Positions 1,909 to 57,640 of a stretch of DNA of 64,000 nucleotides are shown here, one piece after another (positions within the stretch are counted from its first letter, which is position 1; each line of letters opens with the position of its first letter). Under the pieces are notes generated by a model. That model made no database searches. It was not told the DNA's origin and saw nothing but the letters and a program-made list of their open reading frames with translations. Where the stretch lies: positions 62,001 to 126,000 of IMG/VR virus record IMGVR_UViG_3300044700_000691; one strand, written 5' to 3'. A program made the translations under genes and the position numbers.

Positions 1909-1915
1909 TATTTAT
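1909..1915 (-). promoter_or_regulatory. Late promoter candidate ATAAATA for the gp6-like gene
   Basis: T4 late-promoter-like (TATAAATA) motif about 20 nt upstream of the start codon; the motif recurs across the window. Confidence 0.65.
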
Positions 1916-1996
1916 TAGGGATAATTGAACTTTGGAAAAGATTTTACGTCGCTCAAGACTAAATAGATAATTCTTTAGTATTATACTAAGAAATAT

Positions 1997-2463
1997 GGGG
2001 CTGTTTTGGCGTTTGACAAGCGGTCGTAGTTCTTTGAATGCAGGCGGAGTTAGTATTGGAAACTCTTTAATAACCTATACAAACAATAACTGACAATAAG
2101 TCAACTTGGACTTTCGAAGACGCAATGTCTTTCGTAGGTGCAGATTTAGCAGTAGCTGCCTAATCTCTCCCGTATCACTCATGGGACTTTAAGAAGAAGT
2201 GAAAGCCAAATCCAGGTGGCTCCCTTAATAGTCAAGGCTGACCTTGAGCATCTGATCGTGGACGATCTATACAGGGGGCGAAAGAGTTGGAGTAACAGGT
2301 CGGAGCTCTACTAAATAACTTCGAGACCGGGTTGTTTGAAAGTTTGGTTCCTACATACATCAAACTTTATATTTTGTCCGTTTAGAAAAATGGACTAAGC
2401 CTGTAAATGAATTCATTGAAGTAGCCGGATTGGACACGGGTTCGACTCCCGTCAGCTCCACCA
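1997..2463 (+). ncRNA. ssrA: Phage-encoded tmRNA (SsrA); tag ORF 2092-2163, (A)DNKSTWTFEDAMSFVGADLAVAA*
   Basis: 5' GGGGCTG pairs with 3' CAGCTCC-A-CCA, giving the G3.U alanine determinant. T-arm ACGGG-TTCGACT-CCCGT. Resume context AATAACT|GAC. Tag ends LAVAA-TAA. Pseudoknot-like pairings follow the tag. Confidence 0.95.
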
Positions 2464-2484
2464 CTGTAGTATTTTTCTAGGTGA

Positions 2485-2491
2485 ATAAATA
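2485..2491 (+). promoter_or_regulatory. Late promoter candidate ATAAATA for the gp15-like gene
   Basis: Motif ends 5 nt before the ATG at 2497. Confidence 0.6.
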
Positions 2492-2496
2492 ACCAT

Positions 2497-3246
2497 ATGA
2501 AGAATACAAATACTCAGGATATATTCCTACGTAATCTTACAATCTCCCTACTGGATCTATTAAATAGACAGTTGGAGATTGAATTATGGCGTGACGATCG
2601 CCCAGAAATTCATACAATTCCTTTTTACTTTAATCAAGGAACCGACGAAGGCTTTATGCAAGATTTCTTTATAGGAATTCCTTCTACCTGTAAAATTTCA
2701 CAAATGGCAGAAGGTAACTATGATCCTATTCCAAGAGGAATTATTACCTTAAGTTCATTTAATGTAAAATCTTCAGATCTTGTTAATAAGTATGTTAGAG
2801 GAACCTTTCAGCGCGATGAATTTGATGAAAATGATGCAAAGAAAAGTAAAGCCTATTCAGCAAGACTCTATTCCCTGCCACTTAAAGTAAACTTTGATGC
2901 AAAGATTATTGTAGATAATCTTAATAAAACATTTAAGGCAACTGAAAAACTATTTGATCTTTTCTATAGTAATCGAGTAATGTATTTTCAATATAGAGGA
3001 ATCAGGATCCCTGCTCTATTTGTTTTTCCAGATCAGGCAACAAATGATAAAGCCTACAAATTTTCTTACACTGACAATAATAAAATAACTATCACATTTC
3101 AAATTGAAATTGAGACCTACTTTCCAAGCTTTGATAAAACTACGGAAATGTATAGAGGAAATGTTATCGACCAAATCTTAATGAAGACTGTTGATAATGA
3201 TTCTGGTCAATTAGATGGTAAAACTTGGATAGACGGCACAGAATGA
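2497..3246 (+). CDS. Tail terminator / sheath stabiliser, T4 gp15-like
   Basis: Pattern FLRNLTISLLDLLN...IPFYF...PRGIITLSSF...PLKVNFDAKI...ITFQIEIETYFP follows the gp15 layout and size. Confidence 0.65.
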   Translation: MKNTNTQDIFLRNLTISLLDLLNRQLEIELWRDDRPEIHTIPFYFNQGTDEGFMQDFFIGIPSTCKISQMAEGNYDPIPRGIITLSSFNVKSSDLVNKYVRGTFQRDEFDENDAKKSKAYSARLYSLPLKVNFDAKIIVDNLNKTFKATEKLFDLFYSNRVMYFQYRGIRIPALFVFPDQATNDKAYKFSYTDNNKITITFQIEIETYFPSFDKTTEMYRGNVIDQILMKTVDNDSGQLDGKTWIDGTE

Positions 3247-4049
3247 TGAAATACCTATTAGAATACCGAAAATTTGTCCTTAATGAAGGAGGTAATGCCT
3301 TTCCTGAAACAGTTTCAGTTAAGCGCGAAGATATCCAAAGAATCGTTGCAGAGTTTAACGATAAGGTAGTCCAGGGAATACTTGGAAGCCAGCCTGGTGA
3401 ACCGATTGGTAGCTGGAAACAGAAACCTATTTCAGGCGATATTGATTGCCTGGTATACACAGATTTGGAACTTCCTAAAATTGTAGAACTATGCAAAGCT
3501 CAAGGAATTGATGCAAAAGCATTTTATGGTTTTAATATTGTGTCAACTAATTTTACGCCAACTGGTCATGAGCCAGTGCAAATTGATATTTTCGTAAGAC
3601 CTCAAACTGCAAATAAAGAGGCAACTGATATTTTCTATAAAAATATTGAAGAGGATCCAGATACAACTAAACACCGTGTCTATTTCCTGTTTACTGTATT
3701 AGATTCGCGAAAGGAAGATATTGAAGGCGATCCAGCTAGCCCTTCTAAATTTACAGGCTATATGTTAAGACCAGACGGTCTCTATAAGATTGTTAAAGAG
3801 ATGAAAAAGGTTAACTATAAAATTATGGATCGTCAATTAATAGCTGAGTCAGCAGAAGATATGGCTAAAGCAATTTTTGGTCAGCCTCTACCATTTAGCG
3901 AATGGAATACCTTTAAGAAAACTTTTGATCTTTTTATAAAGTCTCCGCTCTATCCAAATAAACAGGAGATTATAGTGGCCTACACTGAGAAATTAAAAGA
4001 AGAAGGATTACCTTTGCCAACTAGTGTTATGCTAGATTCTTACGTTTAA
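3243..4049 (+). CDS. Pol-beta superfamily nucleotidyltransferase with a putative head-targeting leader
   Basis: GS-x7-GDID motif (IGSWKQKPISGDIDCLV) with a third Asp in VQIDIF. N-terminus MKYLLEYRKFVLNE|GGNAF. Start moved to the ATG overlapping the upstream TGA. Confidence 0.7.
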   Translation: MMKYLLEYRKFVLNEGGNAFPETVSVKREDIQRIVAEFNDKVVQGILGSQPGEPIGSWKQKPISGDIDCLVYTDLELPKIVELCKAQGIDAKAFYGFNIVSTNFTPTGHEPVQIDIFVRPQTANKEATDIFYKNIEEDPDTTKHRVYFLFTVLDSRKEDIEGDPASPSKFTGYMLRPDGLYKIVKEMKKVNYKIMDRQLIAESAEDMAKAIFGQPLPFSEWNTFKKTFDLFIKSPLYPNKQEIIVAYTEKLKEEGLPLPTSVMLDSYV

Positions 4050-4678
4050 CCAATATAGTTAAGACCCTCACCAAAATCTAGGGCAATATCGAAGTTATAG
4101 AATTGGAATGATACTTCAAACGTATTAAATTTTGGCGCATTTTCATTATATGACAGTGAAATATTAGTCATGCCCGATAGAATTGGGTGATTAAATACAA
4201 TCGACGAAACTGCATAACCTTCATTATTTAGGAGAGTTAATCGGATTGGATCCATTGTAATACCCTGAGGATCTTGCACAAATGGTTTACCAACACCATT
4301 TAGAGACCTGCGTAAGTTAGTTGGTTCTAAATTACCTTGATCTAAATAGTTAAGCGCATTATCTAAAAAGATAAAATAATTTAGGTAAGCATCACTTAAC
4401 TTAAATTTGATTGTAAATTTACGTTCAAACATTTCAGCAATTGGCTTTGCACTATGAAACTCTTGCATTTTACCAAGAGGTCTTACTTGACTTACCATTG
4501 GCACAGTAAAGCCATTAAATGTAACTGACTGAATAGTCGATGCCATGAAATCTTCAATAGTCTCATACGGCATAATGAGGCTATTATAATATTTCTCGTA
4601 TTTCTTACTTATCTGCTTTGAGAAGAAAGTATCTGGGAAACTAATTAGGAATCCGTTTTGTCTTGCGCTTAGTATCAT
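4046..4678 (-). CDS. Tail tube terminator / tube-fold protein, T4 gp3-like
   Basis: Tube-fold pattern QSVTFNGFTV...FTIKFKLSDAYLNY...LTLLNNEG..SIVFNHP..MTNISLSY...FEVSFQFYNFDI. Confidence 0.65.
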   Translation of the reverse strand: MILSARQNGFLISFPDTFFSKQISKKYEKYYNSLIMPYETIEDFMASTIQSVTFNGFTVPMVSQVRPLGKMQEFHSAKPIAEMFERKFTIKFKLSDAYLNYFIFLDNALNYLDQGNLEPTNLRRSLNGVGKPFVQDPQGITMDPIRLTLLNNEGYAVSSIVFNHPILSGMTNISLSYNENAPKFNTFEVSFQFYNFDIALDFGEGLNYIG

Positions 4679-4684
4679 ATAGAT

Positions 4685-4691
4685 TATTTAT
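4685..4691 (-). promoter_or_regulatory. Late promoter candidate ATAAATA
   Basis: Just upstream of the ATG at 4678 and downstream of a terminator. Confidence 0.65.
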
Positions 4692-4702
4692 TTAGGCTAA
4701 CC

Positions 4703-5692: not shown

Positions 5693-7024
5693 CTAAGCTA
5701 GTCCAAAACGGGTTTGGTACTTCTTAAAGTTTTGAGTAACTTCAGCTTGCGACAGGACTCGATTGTAAATTTTAGCAACTGGGATTTCTCCATTATATGG
5801 ACCAGTTGTAGCCCCATGCCTCTTTCCAAATATAATAACTGAATTAAAATTATAATTAAGGATTGGGTATGCGGTAGTGGTCAATATTAATTGGCCATTT
5901 CTATATAGCTTATAACTGTAATTAGAATATGTTGCAACTAGGTGCACAAACCCTGTAGTAGTTTCCTTTACCCCCGACCAAGCAGTTCTTTCAAATCCAG
6001 TTGACCCAAACCCCCAGCCTTGGCCAGTTTCATTGTATACAATTGTATCAAATGGCTCTCCACTTTCTCCCATTATTCCAATGACTCCTCCGGCTTGATG
6101 ATTTATATCATATACTCTAGTAACAGCTTCATACGTTTTATCTGTAATATTTGGTAAAAATACTCCAGTTTGACCATAGTCGTTTGTACCATCAAATATT
6201 ATTTGTGCATTTGCATCAAAAGAAACAGTTGATATATTAATTGTTGAATTTCCTGCCAAAGGTAAAAGACCCTGTGTTGCAGACCGAGTATAGGCTGAGC
6301 TATATTGAGTAGCATGTGGTTTTACTTCTAATTGAACGTCTGCTATTCTTAATTCGCCAGCGCCAACTGCATGTCCATAAAAATACATGGTTGGTCCACT
6401 ACCTAACTGACCATAGTCCTTGGCCATAAATGTGATAGATACCCTTTGCCAAGTATTAACCTCTGTATTATATCCATTTTGTAAGCCATCATGGAAATCA
6501 TTATAACCACGAGTGGGACTATAAGAATAGATCCCAACATGAGCGGCTCTGTCTAGATTCTCAACGTACTGTAACCAAGATATTGTGTAAAGTGTTCCAG
6601 CAATAATTCCTATACTATTTAGTGACGCTAAGCCTGTCCCAAAATATTTAGCTTGCCAAACGCCCGTTTCATTATACATTCTCACGACAGGCCGCTGTAT
6701 AATAGTATCAAATATCCAATAAGCATGTCTAGTATTATACCACTCAACTCCTGAGTTTGCAGTATTGATACCAGTGTTTAGGTAATATGAAATATCTCCG
6801 CCGTTTGTATTAAAAACTCGAATTGCGCCTGGATGATTGGCTGCTATATTACCTGTGCCAGATTCTGGCATATATGATTCGTATGACCCATCTAATCTGG
6901 CATTTTGATGATAAATGTGATTGGTAGTAGGCTCCCCTAAGTAAGAGTTAACTGTATCTATTGTGTCGTATGCAAAAATTAACCCGCTTGAAACTGATGC
7001 ACCAAATCCGTATTGTATTGCCAT
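5693..7024 (-). CDS. LamG/concanavalin A-like virion protein with an inserted carbohydrate-binding-like domain
   Basis: Start MAIQYG at 7024, directly after the upstream stop. Motifs GLIFAYD, FDGTNDY, HLVATY..LYRNG, GEIPVAKIYNRVLSQAEVTQNF. Confidence 0.8.
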   Translation of the reverse strand: MAIQYGFGASVSSGLIFAYDTIDTVNSYLGEPTTNHIYHQNARLDGSYESYMPESGTGNIAANHPGAIRVFNTNGGDISYYLNTGINTANSGVEWYNTRHAYWIFDTIIQRPVVRMYNETGVWQAKYFGTGLASLNSIGIIAGTLYTISWLQYVENLDRAAHVGIYSYSPTRGYNDFHDGLQNGYNTEVNTWQRVSITFMAKDYGQLGSGPTMYFYGHAVGAGELRIADVQLEVKPHATQYSSAYTRSATQGLLPLAGNSTINISTVSFDANAQIIFDGTNDYGQTGVFLPNITDKTYEAVTRVYDINHQAGGVIGIMGESGEPFDTIVYNETGQGWGFGSTGFERTAWSGVKETTTGFVHLVATYSNYSYKLYRNGQLILTTTAYPILNYNFNSVIIFGKRHGATTGPYNGEIPVAKIYNRVLSQAEVTQNFKKYQTRFGLA

Positions 7025-7025
7025 A

Positions 7026-7739
7026 TTATAATCCGTATCTTGTTTTCTGTACGTTAAAGTTTTGAAGGACTTCTTGCGCTGATAGAGCTCGGTTGTACAC
7101 TCTAAATTGAGAGAAAGATCCTTTATATGGAGCTCCGCCATTCGCATAAGTGCCTAACCCGTAACCATTACTACCCCTACCCATACCGCCATTGTGAAAA
7201 TTAAAATTAGAGGTTCCATCTACCCGAATTCCATTTACATAGGTATTTAAACTTCCTATGCTACTATTAGGTACGGTATCGGTAAATACCCAAGTAAAAA
7301 TGTTCCAAGTATTATTAACCCAACTTCCCATGCCGCCTGGATAATCTCCGCTTGGACTACCGGGAAAGTAGTGAGAGCCCATGCAGCTTGTATGACAATA
7401 AAACATAGGGCCGTAATTTCCATTAGTTCCCATTGATATAATTCCATATGATCCGCCTTGATCTAATCCATTATGATAAAACATTAGCTCTAAGGTAAAG
7501 CTAGAAAGTCCTCCAGTTAATGTAGAGTTTCCAATCCAATCGTTAGTGCCGTCTAGGGTTAATGCTTTAACACCGTTGATTGTTGTATAACTAATTCCAT
7601 TATACAAGGTACCATGATGGTTGCCGCCAGCTAAATCATACCAAGTAGAGCCGCTGCCCGGATATGAGTTAGTATCAGCTGCATCTAGCGCCAATACTAA
7701 GCCGGTTGTAATAATTTTAGGTGAGAAGTGTAAAGCCAT
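7026..7739 (-). CDS. LamG/concanavalin A-like virion protein (short form)
   Basis: GLVLALDAADTNSYPGSGSTWYDL...LDGTNDW...YVNG...FRVYNRALSAQEVLQNF. Confidence 0.85.
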   Translation of the reverse strand: MALHFSPKIITTGLVLALDAADTNSYPGSGSTWYDLAGGNHHGTLYNGISYTTINGVKALTLDGTNDWIGNSTLTGGLSSFTLELMFYHNGLDQGGSYGIISMGTNGNYGPMFYCHTSCMGSHYFPGSPSGDYPGGMGSWVNNTWNIFTWVFTDTVPNSSIGSLNTYVNGIRVDGTSNFNFHNGGMGRGSNGYGLGTYANGGAPYKGSFSQFRVYNRALSAQEVLQNFNVQKTRYGL

Positions 7740-7745
7740 ATAAGA

Positions 7746-7752
7746 TATTTAT
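7746..7752 (-). promoter_or_regulatory. Late promoter candidate ATAAATA
   Basis: Intergenic, 6 nt before the ATG at 7739. Confidence 0.6.
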
Positions 7753-7765
7753 TTGGCTTAAAAAA

Positions 7766-8113
7766 TTATTGAGGCCAATTAGCTTCAATTGGAGAAGACC
7801 ACTCCTCAGTTGCAAGAAGAGCAAGGATTTCCGAATGAGTTAATTCTGGATAAGAGTCACTCCAAACCGAAGGCCTGCCATAGGTTCCGGCTATGGTCGT
7901 AAAAGTCGATTCTTCCATAGATTCAGGATTTAACATTGTTGTGACAATATCTTCTTCGACTACTTGAATTTCATATTTAATAAATGTTTTGGTTCCATCT
8001 AGTGAATATCGTAGGGACTCTTGATTAAATTCTAAAACCTGATCGAAATTGATAGATTCGACTAGGGCAGATGGAATTATTAACCATCTTCTGTTTTCAA
8101 ATGGGGTTTGCAT
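7766..8113 (-). CDS. Small hypothetical protein within the LamG cluster
   Basis: Intact ORF (INFDQVLE...SLRYSLDGTKTFIKY...THSEILALLATEEW) with a TAATG overlap with the upstream gene. Confidence 0.7.
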   Translation of the reverse strand: MQTPFENRRWLIIPSALVESINFDQVLEFNQESLRYSLDGTKTFIKYEIQVVEEDIVTTMLNPESMEESTFTTIAGTYGRPSVWSDSYPELTHSEILALLATEEWSSPIEANWPQ

Positions 8114-9681
8114 TATAAATTAAATCTTTTTTTGTATGCTTTAAAGTTTTGAGATACCTCAGCCGCAGTTAGGGCTCTATTATAAAATTTAACAACATCG
8201 ATTAAACCTGCCCAATTATGCCCACCACCTGAGTATCTGGAACCTATACCACGATGGGTTGTACCAGAAGATAGTGTATTAACTGAACCAGTTGAAACTG
8301 ATGCTTCTAGGTTTCCATTTAGGTAAACGCTAACGGTTGAGCCATTCCAACTATATGCTACATGGTAATATCTATTTGCTGTAATGGTAGAGGTTGTTCT
8401 GGCTCCAGTAGTATGGCCGCCGTTTCCATCAAACCAATTTGATCCATTGTGTAAGTCTATTCCAAAAAAAGTTTGACCTCCATAATTGTATAGAGCAATC
8501 CAAGTACTTGCTTCTTGAATATAAAGCTGATTATAAGAACTTGGTAAAGAAGTCGGCTTACAAATAAATTCATAGGTGGCTCGAGTAAAGCCAGATTGTA
8601 AATTTGTTGATAGTGGTATATAGTCATTTGTTCCGTCAAAGGTAAGGGCACCCGCTGAATCAAATGAAACGTTTGCTACATCAAGTATGGCAGATCCAGC
8701 AACAGTAAGCAAAGATTGGGTTGAGCTTCTAGTTCCTGCAACAAATGGCGTTGGATGAGTATTTTTTTCAACCTGAATATTTGCTAAATCGTATTTGTCG
8801 AGTGCGCCTGGCCAAAAATATGAAATTACATTTTCATTAATTGGGGTAAATTGAAAAGACTGTCGTGTCCACACTCCAAGCGGGCCATGTGTATAACCGT
8901 GACCCCAACTCGTTGGGCTAACACTGCCATAATTATAATTTTGCATCGAACCATATGCATTAGCGGTTTGCTTGTTTAGTGCCCTTGTCCAAAATGAATA
9001 GGTATGAACCTGTCCAGGAACAACGACTGCATCTGGTCCATATGACATACCGTCTGCGCTCTCTGGACGGTGTGCATGTAATCGCATGCAATCAGTTTTT
9101 TGAGAAGGATAAAGATCAAATCCTCCAACTATAATTTCTTTTACTAATCCTGAGTTGGGTAGATGTGGAGGACCCCACCACTTAGTCGGAAACCCGCTAG
9201 AATTTACTGAAACCCGCTGATCTAACCAAAATGAATCATGTACTTTGTGTCCTCTTGTTGCAGGATTAATATAACCTTGATCCCCGCCTTGTGAGCCATT
9301 ATATTCATGTAAGCTAAATTGAGTGTTTGAAATTTTCTTAGCAAAGTAATTAACGCCAGCTGTTACCCCACCCCCTGTTGTTTGAGGAGTAATAACATCA
9401 AACGAATAAATTCCATGGGAACCAGCCGTTGTAATAATATTACCAGAAACGCTTGATATAGCTGGAATATCCCAATGTACTGCACAGCCATTATTTCCAC
9501 AATACTTATTTGTATTATAGGTGGCCCAACCGTTACCAAAAGTTGGATAACTGTTTACTTGAGGAGAGGGTATAGTATTTACAGCAGGCTCGCCCTTATA
9601 ACTATTAAAAAAATCTGCAACATCAAACGCAAATATTAATCCAGTTGAAATTTGTCCATTATATCCTTTACGACTTGGCAT
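8113..9681 (-). CDS. LamG/concanavalin A-like virion protein with inserted domains
   Basis: GLIFAFD..SYKGEP; QVEKNTHPTPFVAGTRS; FDGTNDY; YHVAYSWNGSTVSVYLNG; KFYNRALTAAEVSQNF. Confidence 0.85.
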   Translation of the reverse strand: MPSRKGYNGQISTGLIFAFDVADFFNSYKGEPAVNTIPSPQVNSYPTFGNGWATYNTNKYCGNNGCAVHWDIPAISSVSGNIITTAGSHGIYSFDVITPQTTGGGVTAGVNYFAKKISNTQFSLHEYNGSQGGDQGYINPATRGHKVHDSFWLDQRVSVNSSGFPTKWWGPPHLPNSGLVKEIIVGGFDLYPSQKTDCMRLHAHRPESADGMSYGPDAVVVPGQVHTYSFWTRALNKQTANAYGSMQNYNYGSVSPTSWGHGYTHGPLGVWTRQSFQFTPINENVISYFWPGALDKYDLANIQVEKNTHPTPFVAGTRSSTQSLLTVAGSAILDVANVSFDSAGALTFDGTNDYIPLSTNLQSGFTRATYEFICKPTSLPSSYNQLYIQEASTWIALYNYGGQTFFGIDLHNGSNWFDGNGGHTTGARTTSTITANRYYHVAYSWNGSTVSVYLNGNLEASVSTGSVNTLSSGTTHRGIGSRYSGGGHNWAGLIDVVKFYNRALTAAEVSQNFKAYKKRFNL

Positions 9682-13286: not shown

Positions 13287-16200
13287 TTATTCGCCTCTTA
13301 ATTTTTTAACCTCTAATTTAAGATCTTCTATTTGTGCCTGTTGCTCTTTAATAGCCTCAATTAAGAGTGCAGTCATGTTACCATAAGAAACATTATACAT
13401 TCCAGCGTTATCTTGATTTACAACTTCTGGAACAACTTCTAGCGTTTCTTGTGCAATAACTCCAATCTTAGTTCGAGTATCATCAGAATCAGTTCGGTTA
13501 TAAGAAACTCCACGTAGTGCTAAGGTTTTTGCTAGAGCATTTTCAATTGTATGTATATTGGTTTTAACTCTGGCATCTGAGTATGCTGTTACATCTCCAG
13601 CCATTGTAAGATTACCAGACATATCCATTTGCAATCTATTAGTAGATGCTGACCAACCACCAATGCGCATTACATTATCTGAGTCTAAACCAAAGTTTAC
13701 AGCATAATATCCCCCTCTATGAAAAGACATTATTGCACCACCACCATTATTTGAATATGCTTGTAAAGGAGCTGAATCTGTACTTGTATTTCTATTAGAT
13801 ACAAAATAATTTTGTCCTGTCCAACTATGACCATTACCTAATGAATTAGATATGCTGTTAGTATTACCTACTGTTTGAGATGCAATATTGTATGCTGTAA
13901 TAAATTCATAAAATGTACCATATGATGTAGATGTAGAAGCTTGAACACTTATTGCCATTCTTGGTGTACCATTTCTTAATGTATGTAAAGCACACATTTG
14001 AAGTACATCACCACCAGAATAACCATTAATCCAAAGTGTATCTGACCATACAGACCAAGCTCCTGTCATAGCAGCTTTTAATCCAATACCATTATTAAAA
14101 TATACTTGAGGATTAGTTTGTTGACCTCCAGCATAAGCTGTAGCTAAATATGTTGAATAACCACCAATATTTGTTTGGTCTCCAGTATTTGTACCAGAAG
14201 AAGAACCTGAATGGGAACCGCTAAAGTTTGATGAGGCAAAGGTTCCAGCTATCTGCATATTACCAGATGTAGCGTTTATTGCAGCTATTGGAGCATAAGA
14301 TATTCTACCCCAAGTAAATCCTCTACCTGCATCCCCATCATTCATTTGTGTTTTGATAGAATAATCATTAACCGGTCCATACTGATACAATGAAGATGAA
14401 CCCATACTAATTTTATAAGAATCCGATGACCAAAGCTTTAAACCATTACCTTCGCCTGGTGTCACATTATAGAAGGAGTTCTGATTACTTGCGTTTGGCG
14501 CGGAACCTGCGCTATTTGCATATCTTACACCAAGATCAGAAGGTTCAATCCAACCACTTCCTGAATATGCTCCATTATTATAAACGTATCTAGAGTAATC
14601 AACATAATTTCGACCTTCTCCTCTTGAAATAGCTACACGGGAACTAGCGTCAAACAGAGCCCCGGCATATAAATTATTAGCAGCTCTAACGTGTGAATCT
14701 CCATTGCCGACTGAAAATAATTCAGTTGCCATAGTAGAATCATCATAGAATCTAGTTCCACCATATCCAGTATTTGCTCCGATCTTAATTCCAGTGTGAT
14801 ATCCTATATGTAGATCTGGGTAAGGGTGACTCCAGCCTCCTCCACCTTGATAAATTGCATATGAGTGATTACTTGTGTTACCAGAATCTCCACCGACTCC
14901 AGTAAATCTTAGAACACGCAGAGTTCGATCTTCGTTATCTCTAAAATATGAAAAATTATTAATTTCAGTCTCAGTATAGTATCTGTCATCATGTGTATGT
15001 GAAGAAGCGGCCCATCCTCCGTAATTTCCTAAGTCATTTGAGAATTGAGAAAGAGCAGTTGGTCTACCTGTAACGCCGGTCCATGCAACATTGGTTGCAG
15101 TTGCAGCGTTTCCTGAAATATTTGTTTGATCACCAGTGTTTGTACCGCTTAAATTAGCTGCAAACCAGTTACCACTATTATCAGCATAAGCTCCCCAACT
15201 GTTAGATGAAGTTAAGAAACCGATTCTTCCACTATTACAGTGTATTCTTCTTGTAGTTTCATCTGTATCAGTCATGTAGATATCTGATGATGTACTATTA
15301 CCCACGGTTAGCGATCCATAAACTTGAACTCCTCCAGTATCTACTCTAACTCTCCAGCTATCTGTACTATCTAATAGTCCAAACCCTGCAGCATCTCCAT
15401 ACACTGATCCTTTAAGAGTACTTTCATGGTTAAGTCTAAATTGTAAGTGCACAACTGATCCGCCATTACCTGTAATACCCCATATAGAGCCTCCTCTTGA
15501 GTAAAAGTGATTTCCATTTGCCTGATTATAGAGACCAGTATTGTTTGAATTATTTCGGAACCAGCTGTTATTGTATAAGTCAGTAAAGGTTGGAGATGAT
15601 GAAGTTAGGAGAGCTTGGTTTAGATAACTAGATAACCAGGTTCCTCTGGTTCCAAAGTAAATATCGCCATTTACTAAGAAACTGCCATTTGTTCGTATAC
15701 CTGCATTAGGCGCATCTCCATAGAAATAGTAGGTTTCATTACCTACATAAATATTTGAGTCAAATCTAGCAGAACCTCCGCTATAAACCATTTTATTTCC
15801 GCGTACTCTTAGATAGGTACCGTCAGTCATAAACCAGCCGCCGCCCCAGCCAAAGGATAGGTCTTCATCTTTAAGGTAAGTTGAGGTACCTCGACCAAAC
15901 ACAATACCATCGTTATTGCCTAATAATTGAATTGAGCCATTTACATAAAGTCGGTTATTGGTTGGAACTCCAGTTGCACCAGAGTTATCAGAGGCAGTAT
16001 AAGAAAAATCAGTTGTTCCAAATCCAACCCGGCCGTCTTGGCCTACATAGATTGCATTTGTTCCAAACTTACCAATTTGTACAACATTGTTTGCAAATAC
16101 TTCAAGTACAGGTAAACCTGCAAGGGTATTTACGCTATATAGAGAATCTGAAAGATCATCAACTACTGTAAATAGTCGACCGTTAATTCCATTTACAGCA

Positions 16201-19200
16201 AAAGCTTCAGCTCCTTGGCTTGGGCTATTAATCGTTAAGGCACCGGTCATAGTGTCTCCGCTTACATTAACATATAAATTATCTGCAGTTGCTTGTGATA
16301 ATCCGCTTGAAGACAAAGTTACAGAGTTTCCGCCTGAAATACTTAGGGTATTTCCACTAAGGCTTAAGGTTTGACCATCAGTATTTGTGTCTGTATCAAT
16401 ATCATTAAATGCAGCAGTTAAGGTTGAACCATCACCTTGAGTTAAGGTTAAGGTTTTTGTACCAGTGCCGCTAAATGAAATTGCAGTAGGTCTCTTATCA
16501 TATGCAGTATTCCAGTTTGTTGAATTTCCTCCTGTTGCTGTGATAACTCCTACCGTCCAGATACCATAACCAATAGCTGTTTGGGTACTGCCATTAGCCA
16601 TAAATAGTGCTTGGTGTCCTAATCCAGATTTAGATTGTCCTCCTACATTTGTATGTGTCCATGCAATACCATAAAGAGATCCGGGAGAAGTACCATCGGC
16701 AGATACTTTGTAAGCATCTCCCATTGCAAATACACCCTGGTATCGATCGGAAGCATACAGGCCAACTATACCATTACCATAGTTATCGTCTATATAAAAA
16801 TTACCATTAGCTCGAGTTGCTCTTGCTGCAGTACCCGATACATTAATACTCCAAGTACCACTATTATAAACATAGGCAGTACCGTCTGAGTGTTTTAGTC
16901 TACCTCCATATATGTAAACGGTTCCGCCGCCATTACCAAAATACATATCACCACTTGAGTAATGATTAAAATACATTTGATAAACATTGCCTGCTCCACC
17001 TCTTGTGTCTATATGTAAATTACCGTTAGAAGTTCTAATACGAGCGTATGTTGTATCAGTCGACCAACCGCCAAGATGTAAAGCTGCCGCAGCACTATAT
17101 GAGCTAGCTCCGTATAGAATTAATGCAGTAGCATCACCATTTACAATTGTATTTGTAATATTTGTATAAACTCCATTTGTAACAGAACCGGCATTACCTG
17201 AAATATTAGTAACACTAGTTAAATATCCACTGTTATTAGTAAACTGAGAAATATTCATTGAACTTAGAGCGCCGGCTGTAGCTACAGTTTGTGAACCAAT
17301 GTTTGCTGAAGTTATTACAGCACTACCGTTCGCATACAATGTTCCGCCAATAGCAGCATAAGTATTTCCAGAAGTATCTATTTTAAATCTTTCTGTACCC
17401 CATCCATCTGAAGTTGAGTTATTATTTCTATAACCCATGTTTTGAGTAACACGAAAGTTATCATCATTAGAACAATATCCTACATTCCATCTAGTATCAT
17501 TACCTCCATATGAAAATTGAATAGATGGTCTATCAGAATCGGCAGTATTTATTCTATATCTAGCTACAATACCCCAAGAGTGATTACCTCTATCAGATTC
17601 AAAACTGTATGGAATAAAGTCTCCAGTTGCTGATTGTAAAGTTATCCATTTTCCAGATTGTCCATGGCTCGCTGTACCAACGTTACTTCTATGAAACTCA
17701 GAACCATCACTCCAATATTCATGACCCGCGCCTCCAGAAGGGGCTGCCGCTATATAGGTGTGACCATATATCCAGTTATCAGCGCCCGCTGTTGAAATAC
17801 CATTAGGAAAGAATGCAGAATCGGCAGTGTTCCAAGGATTTCCAGGACTTATGTAACCGCCTTTTGCATAGATAACATCTGTGCTAGGATTTACATAAAC
17901 GTGGGTTGTCCCATAAACATTATTACCAGAACCCCATAATAATTGATATGTTGAGTTTGAATTATTATCATAATTTATAGTTACTTGTGAAGATGTTCCT
18001 GCAATATTTGCATAGGCAACTCGTACACCAGCTGGAGTACCTGGAGAAACTTTAAGTTCCCAGTAACTACCACCATCATAGTTCATGTACATATAGTATG
18101 GAGCAGCTCCGCCGTAAACATAACTTCCATCACTAGCATATAATCGTGTAGAGTTTGTTGCGTAAGTAACAGATTGAGAACCAATATTACCGGTTGTGAT
18201 TAATCCTAAGTTTGATATAAAGTTTGCTGGAGTTTGATAACGCATATAGTCATCATCAGAACAATATATTTTATTTATACCACTTGAAAATGCTCCAGAA
18301 GTTGTGTTAATCCATCCCGCTTGAATATATCCATTGGCATCTGTTCTTACAATTTTGTTTACTTCATTGTTTCTACCACCGTGTACTGCTAACCCACCTG
18401 CTGTTGTAGCATTGCTTACAGACTGAGAGCCAATATTACCGGTTGTGATTGCGTCAGTAATGCCATAACCTGAAATTGTAGTTGGTTTACTGGTTAATGA
18501 AGCAAATGTATGCGAATGTGATATTGCTGCATATCTACCATCTAACAAAGATTGTTTCTTAGTTCGGAGACCATCTATACGTGATGAATTGACTGCAGCT
18601 AATCCTAATGGAGCAGGCGCAGGGACATCATATTGATTTGTACCTGACCAAGCATCATCATAAGATAATGTACTTGAACTATATAAAATGTCAGGTGAAC
18701 CGCTTTGATAAAAACCATTAATTGGTTGATCAGAAAATAGGTGATAAACTGCGCCACCTCCACGTAACATAAAGACATACCCCATTGAGTGGCTATATAT
18801 GAACATATCGGCGCATACGTTTGTATAAGATTCGTTAAATACTCGTAAACGATCTGCATATTCAGCACCGCCCCATCCACCAAAATTACCTTCCCAATCT
18901 AAGAGAAGACCTCCATGGTGAACACCTGTTCCAATTGGATCCCAAGGAGCAGGTTCACCATATCCGCGCTTAATAATAATTCTACGCCAAACATCCTGAT
19001 CTCCTCCCCAAAACTGAACAGCATAAAATCTGTCAGGGTCTCCATCAACTGTAATGTCAACAGAATATGGTAAGGTTGTAACGCCTAACATATTAGATAG
19101 GCCGTTAACTTTAGTCCCAGTTAATTGAGATCCACCTAGATATACACTGCTAAATGAAGGGGCACTGTCTGTTCTAACATTTTGATTTAGATAAGTAGAT

Positions 19201-20009
19201 AACCAATTTCCTCTAGTTCCCAAGTAAATATCTCCATTTGCTAAGAAATTACCATTGGTTCTGATACCAGAGTTTCCGGTATCGCCATAGAGGTAATACG
19301 AACCCTGTGAACCAACTGCTGCATTATTATAGCCAGGATAATATGGATGAGTTGAAAGTAGGTCTCCAGTTAGGGTTCCGCCTGAAAGTAATAAGTATCT
19401 ACCATCGTGGTTATGCGAAGGAAGACTTGTTAAATAACCCGCACTTGCATGGTTACCCCATCCGTATGCAGTGTTCCAATTTGAGGCATTATATCCAGAG
19501 GCAGAAATGGTACCAGTAATAGTTAAATTACCACCGTCCATGTCTAAAATTACGCGGCTTGTTCCTCCACCAACAAATTCAAAATCATTGTTATCACCAT
19601 TCCATCTTAAACCCCAGGCATTAGCAGCGGTTGCGTGCGAAGGATAATAATCTCCAGAGATACCCCAAATATCAAAGTTACCATCGCCTACATCTAAACC
19701 AACTATACCGCCAGGAAATCGTGGACGATTTGCTACCGCGGATGGAAATGTTATTTTTCCAGTTATTGTATCGCCAGCCTTTGAAACTTTACCTGCAAGT
19801 GAGCTCGTAAGTGTTGATGAAAAACTTGCATCATTTCCTAAAGCTGCTGCCAACTCATTAAGAGTATCTAGCGCGCCAGGGGCACCATTAATTAAGTTAT
19901 TAATTTGTGTTGTAACATAAGACGTTGTCGCAATGCTGTGAGCCGCTAGGTTTCCAGCATGGATCGCGCTGTGTCCAGCAATTGTAGTTCCTGATATTAA
20001 TTGTGCCAT
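13287..20009 (-). CDS. Long tail fibre (2240 aa) with a C-terminal peptidase S74 intramolecular chaperone (13287-13580)
   Basis: Gly/Asn/Ser/Thr-rich mosaic with ALDTLNELAAALGND repeat. C-terminus AY|SDARVKTNI...LRGVSY...GVIAQE...LLIEAIKEQQAQI. Confidence 0.9.
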   Translation of the reverse strand: MAQLISGTTIAGHSAIHAGNLAAHSIATTSYVTTQINNLINGAPGALDTLNELAAALGNDASFSSTLTSSLAGKVSKAGDTITGKITFPSAVANRPRFPGGIVGLDVGDGNFDIWGISGDYYPSHATAANAWGLRWNGDNNDFEFVGGGTSRVILDMDGGNLTITGTISASGYNASNWNTAYGWGNHASAGYLTSLPSHNHDGRYLLLSGGTLTGDLLSTHPYYPGYNNAAVGSQGSYYLYGDTGNSGIRTNGNFLANGDIYLGTRGNWLSTYLNQNVRTDSAPSFSSVYLGGSQLTGTKVNGLSNMLGVTTLPYSVDITVDGDPDRFYAVQFWGGDQDVWRRIIIKRGYGEPAPWDPIGTGVHHGGLLLDWEGNFGGWGGAEYADRLRVFNESYTNVCADMFIYSHSMGYVFMLRGGGAVYHLFSDQPINGFYQSGSPDILYSSSTLSYDDAWSGTNQYDVPAPAPLGLAAVNSSRIDGLRTKKQSLLDGRYAAISHSHTFASLTSKPTTISGYGITDAITTGNIGSQSVSNATTAGGLAVHGGRNNEVNKIVRTDANGYIQAGWINTTSGAFSSGINKIYCSDDDYMRYQTPANFISNLGLITTGNIGSQSVTYATNSTRLYASDGSYVYGGAAPYYMYMNYDGGSYWELKVSPGTPAGVRVAYANIAGTSSQVTINYDNNSNSTYQLLWGSGNNVYGTTHVYVNPSTDVIYAKGGYISPGNPWNTADSAFFPNGISTAGADNWIYGHTYIAAAPSGGAGHEYWSDGSEFHRSNVGTASHGQSGKWITLQSATGDFIPYSFESDRGNHSWGIVARYRINTADSDRPSIQFSYGGNDTRWNVGYCSNDDNFRVTQNMGYRNNNSTSDGWGTERFKIDTSGNTYAAIGGTLYANGSAVITSANIGSQTVATAGALSSMNISQFTNNSGYLTSVTNISGNAGSVTNGVYTNITNTIVNGDATALILYGASSYSAAAALHLGGWSTDTTYARIRTSNGNLHIDTRGGAGNVYQMYFNHYSSGDMYFGNGGGTVYIYGGRLKHSDGTAYVYNSGTWSINVSGTAARATRANGNFYIDDNYGNGIVGLYASDRYQGVFAMGDAYKVSADGTSPGSLYGIAWTHTNVGGQSKSGLGHQALFMANGSTQTAIGYGIWTVGVITATGGNSTNWNTAYDKRPTAISFSGTGTKTLTLTQGDGSTLTAAFNDIDTDTNTDGQTLSLSGNTLSISGGNSVTLSSSGLSQATADNLYVNVSGDTMTGALTINSPSQGAEAFAVNGINGRLFTVVDDLSDSLYSVNTLAGLPVLEVFANNVVQIGKFGTNAIYVGQDGRVGFGTTDFSYTASDNSGATGVPTNNRLYVNGSIQLLGNNDGIVFGRGTSTYLKDEDLSFGWGGGWFMTDGTYLRVRGNKMVYSGGSARFDSNIYVGNETYYFYGDAPNAGIRTNGSFLVNGDIYFGTRGTWLSSYLNQALLTSSSPTFTDLYNNSWFRNNSNNTGLYNQANGNHFYSRGGSIWGITGNGGSVVHLQFRLNHESTLKGSVYGDAAGFGLLDSTDSWRVRVDTGGVQVYGSLTVGNSTSSDIYMTDTDETTRRIHCNSGRIGFLTSSNSWGAYADNSGNWFAANLSGTNTGDQTNISGNAATATNVAWTGVTGRPTALSQFSNDLGNYGGWAASSHTHDDRYYTETEINNFSYFRDNEDRTLRVLRFTGVGGDSGNTSNHSYAIYQGGGGWSHPYPDLHIGYHTGIKIGANTGYGGTRFYDDSTMATELFSVGNGDSHVRAANNLYAGALFDASSRVAISRGEGRNYVDYSRYVYNNGAYSGSGWIEPSDLGVRYANSAGSAPNASNQNSFYNVTPGEGNGLKLWSSDSYKISMGSSSLYQYGPVNDYSIKTQMNDGDAGRGFTWGRISYAPIAAINATSGNMQIAGTFASSNFSGSHSGSSSGTNTGDQTNIGGYSTYLATAYAGGQQTNPQVYFNNGIGLKAAMTGAWSVWSDTLWINGYSGGDVLQMCALHTLRNGTPRMAISVQASTSTSYGTFYEFITAYNIASQTVGNTNSISNSLGNGHSWTGQNYFVSNRNTSTDSAPLQAYSNNGGGAIMSFHRGGYYAVNFGLDSDNVMRIGGWSASTNRLQMDMSGNLTMAGDVTAYSDARVKTNIHTIENALAKTLALRGVSYNRTDSDDTRTKIGVIAQETLEVVPEVVNQDNAGMYNVSYGNMTALLIEAIKEQQAQIEDLKLEVKKLRGE
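15012..15119 (-). repeat. 36-codon module shared with 22355-22462 (identical protein, 16 synonymous differences)
   Basis: Codon-by-codon comparison of ISGNAATATNVAWTGVTGRPTALSQFSNDLGNYGGW in both fibre genes. Confidence 0.9.
17218..17261. repeat. 44-bp repeat shared with 20952-20995 (1 mismatch), between the two fibre genes
   Basis: gttaaatatccactgttattagtaaactg(a/t)gaaatattcattga. Confidence 0.9.
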
Positions 20010-25918: not shown

Positions 25919-26347
25919 TTATTTATTCATGTCTATCTCAATTTGTAATGGTTTAACATCTTTACGTTCAGCCTGCACTAAATAAAAAAAAGTTGGCTTG
26001 TGCGAGCCTGCTACTTCAAAATAAGTATCAGTAATATGTTTAATCCACAACGATTGAGATTTACCGAATGGTGTAATTGTAACTGTGATTGAGTCCGCAT
26101 TTGCTAAGCTTGCCCAATATTCTGGAAAAAAGATACGTTTAGCTTCACTCTTTCCTCTAAGGTAGATGCCATGTTCGGGGCCTTCTAAGTTACCGTGCGC
26201 AAGTTTAAAACCTGGCTTGGTTGGATGGTCAATTAAGAACTGCTTGGTAACAGCTGAAAAATTACCATTATGACTAATATCTCCAGACGTTTCGTTATAC
26301 GTCATGTGAGTACTGATATTAACTTGTTTTAGTTTAACTTGAGCCAT
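25919..26347 (-). CDS. Short fibre-associated protein with a fibre C-terminal/chaperone-like domain
   Basis: KQFLIDHPTKPG.KLAHGNLEGPEHGIYLRG...PEYW...ITVTITP...FFYLVQAERKDV, a motif usually seen at phage fibre C-termini. Confidence 0.6.
   Translation of the reverse strand: MAQVKLKQVNISTHMTYNETSGDISHNGNFSAVTKQFLIDHPTKPGFKLAHGNLEGPEHGIYLRGKSEAKRIFFPEYWASLANADSITVTITPFGKSQSLWIKHITDTYFEVAGSHKPTFFYLVQAERKDVKPLQIEIDMNK
25920..25926 (-). promoter_or_regulatory. Late promoter candidate ATAAATA for the fibre operon
   Basis: Overlaps the stop of the upstream gene, about 22 nt before the GTG at 25897. Confidence 0.55.
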
Positions 26348-27951: not shown

Positions 27952-27958
27952 TATTTAT
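27952..27958 (-). promoter_or_regulatory. Late promoter candidate ATAAATA
   Basis: Intergenic, upstream of 27925. Confidence 0.65.
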
Positions 27959-27977
27959 TTGTTGATTGTTCAGTAAT

Positions 27978-31158: not shown

Positions 31159-31165
31159 TATTTAT
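31159..31165 (-). promoter_or_regulatory. Late promoter candidate ATAAATA
   Basis: Intergenic, upstream of 31138. Confidence 0.65.
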
Positions 31166-31184
31166 TATCCCAAACTGGATTTGC

Positions 31185-34594: not shown

Positions 34595-34621
34595 CCAAGT
34601 TTAGCCTGGTCGCTAACTTAA

Positions 34622-34628
34622 ATAAATA
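34622..34628 (+). promoter_or_regulatory. Late promoter candidate ATAAATA (divergent pair, plus strand)
   Basis: Upstream of 34648. Confidence 0.6.
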
Positions 34629-51136: not shown

Positions 51137-51143
51137 TATTTAT
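51137..51143 (-). promoter_or_regulatory. Late promoter candidate ATAAATA
   Basis: Context GCTAATAAATAACAAAAA is nearly identical to the site at 57616. Confidence 0.7.
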
Positions 51144-51209
51144 TAGCAGAGTGTTAGCTTGCAAATAATAGCCGATTAGCCTTCTTGTACTAACAAAACA
51201 GAAACTGGC

Positions 51210-57615: not shown

Positions 57616-57622
57616 TATTTAT
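57616..57622 (-). promoter_or_regulatory. Late promoter candidate ATAAATA
   Basis: Intergenic, upstream of 57599. Confidence 0.7.
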
Positions 57623-57640
57623 TAGCCAGGAAATGGCAAG

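What the first reader, a model, noticed from the sequence alone, without database searches (positions are those of the whole stretch)
3243..4049. Late-expressed nucleotidyltransferase with a possible capsid-targeting leader, next to the tmRNA
Seen: intact pol-beta NTase motifs (GS..GDID..QID), translational coupling to the gp15-like gene behind a late promoter motif, and an N-terminus MKYLLEYRKFVLNE|GG. Known: T4-type prohead proteases cleave after Glu in short leaders of internal head proteins. Inference: the enzyme may be packaged and injected with the DNA. Possible roles are tRNA/tmRNA 3'-end repair, nucleotidylation of host proteins, or interference with nucleotide-signalling defences. Its substrate is unknown.
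Basis: partly seen in the sequence, partly recalled or inferred. Interest (0 to 1): 0.6.

Follow-up and report, generated by a model that had tools for sequence, protein, structure and literature searches.

The report
Phage Pol X-like enzyme with cleavable leader
This late gene of a freshwater T4-like phage encodes a small enzyme shaped like the core of family X DNA repair polymerases, from an undescribed phage-only family that is probably carried inside the virus particle after a short leader is cut off.

Summary
The ORF (3243-4049, +, 268 aa) is real and conserved.

**What was shown**
- The predicted fold (pLDDT 94) is the palm plus thumb of family X DNA polymerases. The eight best PDB matches are all Pol X enzymes, including minimal ASFV Pol X.
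- The catalytic residues G56/S57, D66, D68 and D115 are conserved across the family.
- Pfam and PHROGs do not describe the family. It has 335 clusters and is almost only viral. It is not RlaP, a CCA-adding enzyme or a CD-NTase.
- Elsewhere the domain is fused or adjacent to RNA-ligase-like, HIGH-nucleotidyltransferase and Nudix domains. That points to 3'-end extension or gap filling before ligation.

**Leader idea: partly supported**
- 147 of 151 relatives with anything in front of the domain have [LIV]-x-E directly before an invariant Gly-Gly. Another 14 start at M-GG.
- The phage encodes a T4-type prohead protease.
- Leaderless homologues were detected in purified virions of phages Atu_ph07 and PA5oct.
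- Against it, the leader does not match this phage's own strict T4-like capsid-targeting motif.

Cleavage, packaging and substrate remain untested. The tmRNA linkage is conserved, but nothing shows it is functional.

The parts
1997..2463 (+). Phage tmRNA gene ending in an encoded CCA. It is conserved upstream of the operon in relatives.
   Evidence: ARAGORN. Rfam RF00023 at 104.6 bits, full model. Present on the same strand 0.8-1.9 kb upstream of the homologous gene in 12 of 14 related loci. Far deeper than the flanking genes in four metatranscriptome runs.
2484..2491 (+). AATAAATA motif, a T4-late-promoter-like element 6 nt before the gp15-like start codon.
   Evidence: 10 of 14 window occurrences lie within 30 nt upstream of an ORF start in sense orientation. 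The exact T4 motif TATAAATA is rare (2 against 11.9 expected).
2497..3246 (+). gp15-like tail sheath stabiliser / tail completion gene, first gene of the two-gene unit.
   Evidence: 53% identical to the L005 homologue, which matches PF16724 T4-gp15_tss at E 9.8e-6, 25.4 bits. The window protein itself has no Pfam or PHROG hit.
3243..4049 (+). Pol X-like nucleotidyltransferase ORF (268 aa, 30.6 kDa, pI 5.2).
3243..3287 (+). N-terminal leader, residues 1-15, ending L-N-E. The proposed cleavage is between E15 (3285-3287) and G16 (3288-3290).
   Evidence: Lowest-confidence part of both models (pLDDT 26-52; 63-66). The [LIVMF]-x-E|GG junction is present in 147 of 151 relatives that have sequence before GG, and 14 relatives start at M-GG or M-SG.
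3300..3602 (+). Palm subdomain (about residues 20-120) with G56-S57 (3408-3413), D66 and D68 (3438-3446), and Q113 and D115 (3579-3587).
   Evidence: G56, D66, D68, Q113 and D115 are invariant in 84 diverse relatives and in 53 fusion proteins. The family profile aligns its GS...SGDxD with that of pol beta.
3603..3917 (+). Thumb-like subdomain (about residues 121-225): two helices, a four-stranded sheet and a helix.
   Evidence: Model residues 20-225 align with pol beta 142-335, that is palm plus thumb up to pol beta's C-terminus (Z 10.8, 170 residues, rmsd 3.9). They also align with ASFV Pol X over 158 of its 176 residues (Z 9.6).
3918..4046 (+). C-terminal helical extension (about residues 226-268), absent from Pol X structures.
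   Evidence: Helices 224-233, 240-253 and 264-267. Barely covered by the structural matches. Not searched on its own.
4046..4678 (-). Convergent tail-tube-like gene whose stop overlaps the ORF's stop by 4 nt. It has its own AATAAATA motif at 4685-4692.
   Evidence: phrog_45 tail tube, E 1.8e-4. Motif. The same neighbour is present in relatives.

Best explanation
**Shown or strongly supported**
- The ORF encodes a catalytically intact nucleotidyltransferase of an uncurated, essentially phage-only family.
- Its fold is the palm plus thumb of family X DNA polymerases. It resembles the minimal Pol X of African swine fever virus, with an added C-terminal helical tail.
- It is co-transcribed and translationally coupled with a gp15-like tail gene, behind a motif that precedes many structural genes of this phage.

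**Inferred, moderate support**
- The first 15 residues are a propeptide.
- The phage's T4-type prohead protease removes it after the L-N-E site, leaving an N-terminal Gly-Gly.
- The mature enzyme stays in the virion and enters the host with the DNA.

**Inferred, weaker**
- In the cell it adds one or a few nucleotides to a 3' end, or fills a short gap in damaged DNA or RNA (phage or host).
- A phage ligase then seals the break. This would be the nucleotide-restoring step of an end-repair pathway, in the way RlaP serves RNA ligases.
For: **Fold**
- AlphaFold2 pLDDT is 88 and 93.8.
- Foldseek matches pol lambda, beta and mu at E about 5e-6, probability 1.00.
- VIA-align: the top eight hits are all family X enzymes (Z 9.6-10.8, 158-190 residues over model residues 2-234). 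All other nucleotidyltransferases match only about 90 palm residues at Z 8.7 or less.
- 10 of 84 relatives weakly hit PF14792 DNA_pol_B_palm.
- The catalytic residues are invariant.

**Family**
- 335 clusters at E <= 1e-3 among 1.84 billion representatives.
- ESM Atlas neighbour clusters are 92-100% viral.

**Late operon**
-.

**Propeptide**
- The junction statistic and the 14 leaderless members come.
- P3 composition is L 89, I 37, V 18, which fits the T4 gp21 rule L/I-x-E (PMC9026906).
- The genome has an S77 protease fused to a scaffold that carries seven [LIV]-x-E repeats.
- The leader is the only low-confidence segment of the model.

**Virion association of the family**
- Atu_ph07 gp65 (32.16 kDa) gave 10 unique peptides and 36.8% coverage.
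- PA5oct EST35_0231 scores 80 bits against the family profile. It is annotated as a structural protein by ESI-MS/MS from CsCl-purified virions.

**Ligase link**
- Among 53 long relatives, partners are DUF6267 (6), RNA_ligase (2, plus weaker hits), CTP_transf_like (11) and NUDIX (2).
- Adjacent KxDG ligase-like genes occur in Atu_ph07 (gp66) and PA5oct (0228).
- The window's genome has two RNA-ligase-family genes and a DNA ligase.
Against: - No activity, substrate, cleavage or virion data exist for this protein or for any leader-bearing member.
- The leader fails the strict targeting heptad [YF][STQ]E[FYH][LIV]xE. That heptad occurs 11 times in the genome against 0.11 expected, only in the scaffold and at four small-protein N-termini.
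- Both virion-detected homologues lack a leader, and Lak phage (S77-positive) also has a leaderless copy.
- The h-x-E-GG motif is also present at 32 internal junctions in fusion proteins. It could therefore be a structural element of the domain rather than a protease site.
- Some fusion genes lie in replication or metabolism neighbourhoods, not structural ones.
- The Atu_ph07 virions were only PEG-purified, and the list contains likely contaminants such as ribonucleotide reductase.
- The protein is acidic (pI 5.1-5.2), unlike the basic T4 internal proteins.
- Sequence-level links to Pol X are below curated thresholds.
- No ligase gene is adjacent in this phage.
Confidence: 0.5

Rival explanations
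1. The enzyme and fold are as above, but it is a cytoplasmic late enzyme that is neither cleaved nor packaged. In this reading the N-terminal segment and its h-x-E-GG motif are an intrinsic structural or regulatory element of the domain, for example a helix capped by Glu before a Gly-Gly turn. The enzyme would tidy nicks and gaps in replicated phage DNA, or damaged RNA, late in infection.
For: - The h-x-E-GG motif is kept at 32 internal junctions of multidomain proteins.
- The leader consensus is shared across very different phages instead of following each phage's own targeting motif.
- It fails this genome's strict heptad.
- Fusion genes lie next to DNA_pol_A, RecA and nucleotide-metabolism genes.
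- The protein is acidic.
Against: - 14 members, including three from complete phage genomes, start exactly at GG. They lack the hydrophobic residue and the Glu, so those residues are not needed by the domain.
- The segment is the only low-confidence part of the models.
- P3 is almost only L, I or V, as in T4 protease sites.
- Two homologues are virion-proteome hits.
Confidence: 0.3
2. It is a tRNA/tmRNA 3'-end (CCA) repair or maturation enzyme serving the adjacent phage tmRNA.
For: - The order tmRNA, gp15-like gene, nucleotidyltransferase is conserved in 12 of 14 related loci.
- The tmRNA is abundant in RNA libraries.
- Jumbo phages are known to carry CCA-adding enzymes and RlaP for RNA end repair (PMC7824862).
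Against: - The tmRNA gene already encodes its CCA end.
- Two related loci have the enzyme with no tmRNA within 10 kb.
- Atu_ph07, PA5oct and Lak copies are not next to a tmRNA.
- The CCA-adding enzyme matches only the palm (Z 6.5, 85 residues).
- There is no PF01743 or PF10127 match to this ORF.
- The linkage can be explained by general synteny of the structural module.
Confidence: 0.08
3. It is an injected effector that nucleotidylates host molecules (MenT-like tRNA blocking, or protein AMPylation), or that makes or mimics signalling nucleotides to interfere with CBASS-type defence.
For: - Homologues are virion-associated.
- MenT1 and several CD-NTases appear among the structural matches (Z 6-7.6).
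Against: - Those matches cover only the shared palm (about 90-97 residues) and rank below all family X enzymes.
- The thumb and the recurrent ligase partners point to polynucleotide 3' ends as substrate.
- No Pfam hit to those families was found.
Confidence: 0.07

Closest known systems
Family X DNA polymerases, especially the minimal Pol X of African swine fever virus (PDB 5hr9) and the pol beta palm-thumb core (PDB 4rpx, 3lqc)
   Same: - Palm plus thumb architecture over model residues 20-225.
- GS...SGDxD and xDx catalytic motifs with the same spacing as pol beta.
- Like ASFV Pol X, it has no 8-kDa or fingers domain.
- Viral family X enzymes are also known as ligase fusions (PgV PolX, PMC5537341, title and abstract seen).
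   Different: - Sequence similarity is below every curated threshold.
- It has an N-terminal leader followed by an invariant GGxAF segment.
- It has an extra beta hairpin pair in the thumb and a 45-residue helical tail.
- Template dependence and sugar preference are unknown.
- The host range is phages, not eukaryotic viruses or cells.
RlaP (PF10127), the RNA-ligase-associating pol-beta nucleotidyltransferases
   Same: - It is a pol-beta superfamily enzyme repeatedly linked to RNA-ligase-family genes in phages.
- RlaP adds one or two NMPs to damaged RNA 3' ends before ligation (PMC12776372; PMC7824862). This is the working model adopted here.
   Different: - PF10127 does not match this ORF or its genome.
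- Atu_ph07 carries a separate RlaP elsewhere in its genome.
- This family has a Pol X-type thumb and an N-terminal junction motif.
T4 internal proteins and Alt: head-packaged proteins with N-terminal propeptides cut by gp21
   Same: - A short N-terminal leader ends in L/I-x-E before a small residue.
- The genome has an S77 protease, a scaffold and a gp23-type capsid protein.
- The T4 targeting sequence is MKTYQEFIAE, with key residues 4, 7, 8 and 10 (PMC8442874, PMC9026906). The family consensus MKYLLEF..F.L.E is loosely similar.
   Different: - It is not a match to the strict heptad used by this phage's own four candidate internal proteins.
- The protein is acidic rather than basic.
- The gene lies in the tail module.
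- Packaging is not shown for any leader-bearing member.
Polyvalent proteins of phages and conjugative elements (PMC5512222)
   Same: Some relatives are 1,500-2,400-residue proteins that combine this domain with HIGH nucleotidyltransferase, Nudix and kinase domains. One is followed by a zincin-like peptidase gene.
   Different: The window protein is a single-domain, stand-alone version. Whether the large relatives are delivered with the DNA was not tested.

Membership tests
Pol-beta superfamily nucleotidyltransferases | hG[GS] motif, then [DE]h[DE]h, then a third acidic residue on a neighbouring strand, within the alpha-beta palm fold. | tested here: met
   G56-S57, D66-I-D68 and D115 are present and are invariant in 84 and 53 relatives. 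Palm matches to many superfamily members have Z 6-10.8.
Family X DNA polymerases | Palm followed by the Pol X-type thumb (C-terminal subdomain). | tested here: met
   On predicted models only. The top eight PDB matches are all family X, with 158-190 residues aligned through pol beta's C-terminus and Z 9.6-10.8. Foldseek E is about 5e-6.
Family X DNA polymerases | Match to the curated sequence models (PF14792 palm, PF14791 thumb) at their thresholds. | tested here: not met
   P0001 has no Pfam hit at E <= 1. 10 of 84 relatives hit PF14792 only weakly, best E 0.0012. The family profile against PDB pol beta gives E 1.
Family X DNA polymerases | 8-kDa lyase and fingers (helix-hairpin-helix) domains. 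| tested here: not met
   The protein starts at the palm, with only 15-20 residues before it. ASFV Pol X also lacks these domains, so this does not exclude a minimal Pol X.
Family X DNA polymerases | Template-directed gap-filling DNA synthesis. | not testable with these tools
   Needs primer-extension assays.
RlaP (PF10127) | Match to PF10127. | tested here: not met
   There is no match in G000 or G001 at E <= 0.1. Atu_ph07's RlaP lies at 154923-155339, not at its copy of this family.
RlaP (PF10127) | Genomic association with RNA ligases. | tested here: inconclusive
   This is met for the wider family through fusions and adjacent genes. In this genome the ligase genes are 105-145 kb away.
CCA-adding enzymes / poly(A) polymerases (PF01743) | Head domain plus neck, body and tail domains for tRNA binding. 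| tested here: not met
   P0001 has no Pfam hit. PDB 1miv aligns over 85 palm residues only, Z 6.5.
CD-NTases (cGAS/DncV-like) | Palm plus the CD-NTase helical C-terminal lobe. | tested here: not met
   CdnC, CdnD, CdnE and CdnG match about 92-98 residues at Z 6.1-7.2, below all Pol X hits.
T4-type head-packaged proteins with a capsid-targeting propeptide | Short N-terminal leader ending in L/I-x-E, in a phage with an S77 prohead protease. | tested here: met
   The leader ends at L13-N-E15. PF03420 scores 50 bits in the genome. The junction is conserved family-wide.
T4-type head-packaged proteins with a capsid-targeting propeptide | Leader resembles the targeting sequence used by the same phage's internal proteins. 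| tested here: not met
   The strict heptad is found in four small ORFs and seven scaffold repeats, but not in this ORF.
T4-type head-packaged proteins with a capsid-targeting propeptide | Presence in virions in processed form. | not testable with these tools
   Indirect evidence only: leaderless homologues appear in the virion proteomes of Atu_ph07 and PA5oct.

The most novel reading that the evidence does not exclude
A whole phage-specific family of minimal Pol X-like enzymes may work as protease-activated virion cargo. In this reading, whatever precedes the domain (a short leader or entire upstream domains) is removed by a T4-type prohead protease at the near-invariant [LIV]-x-E|GG junction. 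Leaderless members would reach the same end by Met removal. The free N-terminal Gly-Gly would be required for activity, for example as a lyase-type amine nucleophile or a substrate clamp. The enzyme would then be ejected with the genome to restore nucleotides at damaged DNA or RNA ends for a phage ligase to seal.
Probability: 0.25. Interest if true: 0.75.

Novelty: new variant of a known kind. Interest (0 to 1): 0.6.

Why it matters
Three points would matter if the reading holds.

- **Injected enzymes.** Few enzymes are known to travel inside phage heads; T4 Alt and virion RNA polymerases are examples. A packaged, repair-type polymerase would be a new class of injected enzyme. It would suggest that some phages repair or process nucleic-acid ends from the first moments of infection, possibly as a counter to host nucleases.

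- **A large undescribed family.** The family has 335 clusters at 50% identity, is almost wholly viral, and is absent from Pfam and PHROGs. It includes members in the isolated phages Atu_ph07 and PA5oct, which are available for bench tests. Its near-invariant [LIV]-x-E|GG junction is a directly testable prediction about prohead-protease processing.

- **A compact scaffold for biochemistry.** It gives a 250-residue Pol X-like core without a fingers or 8-kDa domain.

Tried and rejected
- **Sequence searches with the window protein.** Pfam, PHROGs and phmmer against the PDB gave nothing usable. A profile of the 27 close homologues against the PDB gave only chance hits.
- **Phage genome collection.** tblastn of the window protein found nothing at E <= 1e-5, and megablast of the region found only 43 nt of the tmRNA.
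- **Related loci.** The search for related loci failed with the diverse alignment. It also found nothing with three distant leader-bearing members. I therefore could not test whether leader-bearing members occur only in phages with S77 proteases.
- **Contigs of the closest leaderless relatives.** P0031, P0033 and the leader-bearing P0037 lie on contigs too short to inform.
- **Complex prediction.** Protease domain with residues 1-45 gave no answer (score 0.01, controls not run). This is neither for nor against binding.
- **Ligase partner in this genome.** DUF6267 and the N-terminal part of a ligase fusion found nothing in the window's genome. BLASTP of the genome's 964-residue ligase-domain protein against fusion P0056 showed no similarity. 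My eyeballed HIGH-like motif in that protein was not confirmed by Pfam and is not used.
- **RlaP, CCA-adding and CD-NTase membership.** All rejected.
- **Literature.** No paper mentions DUF6267.
- **RNA-library evidence.** Contigs identical to the ORF exist in three studies, but contigs cannot show transcription, strand or timing.
- **Genetic code.** Another code (table 15) was named only for the Lak phage locus, where the S77 match itself contains in-frame TAG codons.
Full report
**Setting**

The window is bases 62001-126000 of a 216,815-bp viral record with 36% G+C, estimated 84% complete. DNA nearly identical to the region occurs in freshwater metagenomes from many studies. The genome encodes a gp23-type major capsid protein and a T4-type S77 prohead protease. 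The protease is fused to a long scaffold protein. The window itself is mostly tail and fibre genes.

**Observation check**

- ORF 3243-4049 (+) gives 268 residues.
- Its ATG overlaps the TGA of ORF 2497-3246.
- The upstream ORF is 53% identical to a positional homologue that passes Pfam's T4-gp15_tss threshold. "gp15-like" is therefore fair.
- The promoter-like motif is AATAAATA. Its total count in the window is not above chance, but 10 of 14 copies sit within 30 nt upstream of ORF starts in the right orientation. The exact T4 motif is rare.
- A tmRNA lies at 1997-2463.

**Conservation and synteny**

A word-based search found 27 metagenomic homologues of 259-267 residues at 41-98% identity, none named. 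In the alignment the leader consensus is MKYLLEF..F.L.E. It is followed by invariant E15, G16, G17, A19 and F20 (N18 in all but two), then the catalytic motifs and several thumb motifs.

In long contigs carrying the 87% and 46-47% identical homologues the gene order is the same: gp6-like baseplate gene on the opposite strand, then tmRNA, gp15-like gene, this gene, then a convergent tail-tube-like gene. ARAGORN finds the tmRNA in 12 of 14 related loci.

**Fold**

- With the 27-sequence alignment AlphaFold2 gave pLDDT 88, with residues 1-16 below 50.
- With 84 diverse relatives it gave pLDDT 93.8 and pTM 0.87. Residues 1-20 were the only weak segment, at 63-66.
- Foldseek against the PDB returned pol lambda, mu, beta and TdT at E about 5e-6.
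- An exhaustive structural scan put eight family X polymerases on top in both models. Z was 9.6-10.8 with 158-190 aligned residues.
- Pol beta 142-335 aligns with model residues 20-225. ASFV Pol X aligns over 158 of its 176 residues.
- Terminal uridylyltransferases, poly(A) polymerases, MenT1, CD-NTases, CCA-adding enzyme and aminoglycoside nucleotidyltransferases matched only about 85-100 palm residues at Z 8.7 or less.

At sequence level the link is weak but points the same way. The family profile aligns its GS...SGDxD with that of pol beta at E 1. Ten of 84 relatives hit PF14792 weakly.

From memory, and therefore only a lead, family motifs FYK, YMLRPDG and the FG..P...W segment resemble pol beta's YFTGS region, YTIRPLG and the C-terminal Pol X signature.

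**The wider family**

A profile search of 1.84 billion cluster representatives gave 335 hits at E <= 1e-3. The nearest ESM Atlas clusters are 92-100% viral. BFVD's best match is an uncharacterised Atu_ph07 protein. G56, D66, D68, Q113 and D115 are invariant in stand-alone members and in fusions. PHROGs and Pfam have no model for the family.

Among 53 long relatives the partner domains were as follows:

| Partner domain | Members |
|---|---|
| CTP_transf_like | 11 |
| DUF6267 (carries a KxDG motif) | 6 |
| RNA_ligase | 2, plus several weaker hits |
| NUDIX | 2 |
| APH | 2 |

RlaP (PF10127) does not match this ORF or its genome, and Atu_ph07 has a separate RlaP.

**The junction**

I located the start of the domain in 177 sequences with a local profile search.

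- 115 N-terminal leaders (5-33 residues, median 14) have [LIVMF]-x-E immediately before the Gly-Gly.
- 32 internal junctions have the same motif.
- 14 proteins begin M-GG or M-SG.
- Only 4 leaders lack the motif, and three of those have it displaced by 1-4 residues or carry the aliphatic residue one position further upstream.
- P3 is L 89, I 37, V 18, F 2, M 1.

T4 gp21 cuts after L/I-x-E. The T4 targeting sequence is the first ten residues of IPIII, with residues 4 and 7 needed for targeting and 8 and 10 for processing (PMC9026906). The sequence MKTYQEFIAE is given in PMC8442874.

Leaderless genes are real. In Atu_ph07 a stop lies 11 codons upstream of the M-GG start. The Lak-B5 and PA5oct copies start MSG. 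The hydrophobic residue and the Glu therefore travel with the leader and are dispensable for the domain. This favours a processing site over a structural element, but it does not prove it.

**Virion evidence from homologues**

- The family profile finds one copy in Atu_ph07, at 51340-52173.
- By order and by calculated masses of seven neighbouring genes, it is gp65, 32.16 kDa.
- The published virion ESI-MS/MS table lists gp65 with 10 unique peptides and 36.8% coverage (PMC6102473 supplement). That preparation was PEG-purified and includes probable contaminants.
- PA5oct EST35_0231 is a full-length member (80 bits, E 4e-26).
- GenBank annotates it as a structural protein found by ESI-MS/MS. The virions were CsCl-purified (PMC7318152).
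- In both phages a KxDG ligase-like gene lies next to it or two genes away: gp66, with RNA_ligase at E 0.002, and EST35_0228.
- Atu_ph07, PA5oct and Lak all have S77-type proteases.

**This phage's own targeting signal**

The heptad [YF][STQ]E[FYH][LIV]xE occurs 11 times in the genome against 0.11 expected. Seven copies form a 14-residue repeat in the scaffold. Four lie 6-7 residues after the start of small ORFs of 95-141 residues, for example ...YTEFITE|A. That is a close copy of the T4 signal.

The ORF under study is not among them. Its leader is only loosely similar, with aromatic residues, an acidic residue and then [LIV]-x-E. This is the main internal evidence against simple capsid targeting by the same route.

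**Function**

The Pol X-type thumb and the recurrent ligase partners make a polynucleotide 3' end the most likely substrate. Nucleotide restoration before sealing is the most likely role, as predicted and recently shown for RlaP on RNA (PMC7824862; PMC12776372).

The genome has the following ligase-related genes:
- an Rnl2-type ligase next to a P-loop kinase;
- a 964-residue protein with an RNA-ligase domain;
- an ATP-dependent DNA ligase.

DNA versus RNA, templated versus untemplated, and phage versus host targets cannot be decided here.

**tmRNA and expression**

The tmRNA linkage is conserved. However, the gene already encodes its CCA end, and the linkage is absent in two relatives and in the distant phages. 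I treat it as synteny. Contigs from four metatranscriptome runs (three studies) match parts of the ORF exactly, and the tmRNA is far deeper in those runs. Contigs cannot show transcription or timing.

**Verdict**

The enzyme is best described as a minimal Pol X-like nucleotidyltransferase of a new, phage-restricted family.

Noticed in passing
G000:C1:11533-11958(+), 154089-154442(-), 167233-167520(-), 204895-205275(-); scaffold repeats at C1:156979-157315(-) (all outside the window): Four small ORFs (95-141 aa) start with a near copy of the T4 capsid-targeting sequence (for example MNNILTYTEFITE|A). The same heptad is repeated seven times with a 14-residue period in the scaffold. There are 11 hits against 0.11 expected. 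These ORFs are candidate internal (ejected) proteins of this phage.
   Followed up: partly
G000:C1:about 156300-158300(-) (loci L001, L002): The S77 prohead protease and the scaffold are one open frame of about 650-680 residues. G001 has the same arrangement (674 aa), and PA5oct gp152 is annotated likewise.
   Followed up: partly
window 1997-2463: The tmRNA is 467 nt here, against 369-383 nt in more distant relatives. RNA-library contigs of a variant lack 124 nt (2084-2207). ARAGORN's tag peptide for this copy looks implausible, whereas relatives end in the usual ...LAA. The RNA is hundreds of times deeper than the neighbouring genes in metatranscriptomes.
   Followed up: partly
window 1909-1916, 2484-2491, 4685-4692, 7746-7753, 25920-25927, 27952-27959, 31159-31166, 34621-34628, 51137-51144, 57616-57623: AATAAATA lies 6-26 nt upstream of ten ORF starts in sense orientation. 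It is probably this phage's late promoter or a start-region motif. Three sites have an identical 6-nt spacing to the ATG.
   Followed up: partly
MF403008.1 44090-50592 (locus L035 91-6593): Atu_ph07 gp56-gp63 are eight consecutive proteins, seven of 29-31 kDa and one of 41 kDa. All are in the published virion proteome. Their N-termini share M[RK][WL]xQL[TNIL]E, which is an L-x-E site, so this looks like a targeting propeptide array in a jumbo phage.
   Followed up: no
window 5693-7147, 7026-7739, 8113-9681 (all -): Three neighbouring ORFs share a C-terminal motif (...YNR.L...EV.QNF....R.GL). The corresponding genes in a related contig hit Laminin_G_3, so they are probably a set of fibre or receptor-binding paralogues. 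Two of the ORFs overlap by about 120 nt as listed.
   Followed up: no
window 13287-20009, 20015-25897, 38123-44245 (all -): There are three very large ORFs (2240, 1960 and 2040 aa) in the structural region. They were not analysed.
   Followed up: no
G000:C1:209585-211189 and C1:170664-173558 (loci L039, L047): The genome carries RNA-repair-type genes. One is an Rnl2-type ligase with an OB-fold domain, next to an AAA_33 P-loop kinase. The other is a 964-residue protein whose first 235 residues are an RNA-ligase domain.
   Followed up: partly
locus L003 8772-9227: In the 87%-identical relative, an RNaseH_like (PF04308) gene sits between the tmRNA and the gp15-like gene. The window has no gene at that position.
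   Followed up: no
locus L054 16732-17256: A 2243-residue relative combines this domain with CTP_transf_like and kinase-like parts. It is followed by a small ATLF/M90-like zincin peptidase gene, which may be an alternative processing protease for the large fusion proteins.
   Followed up: no
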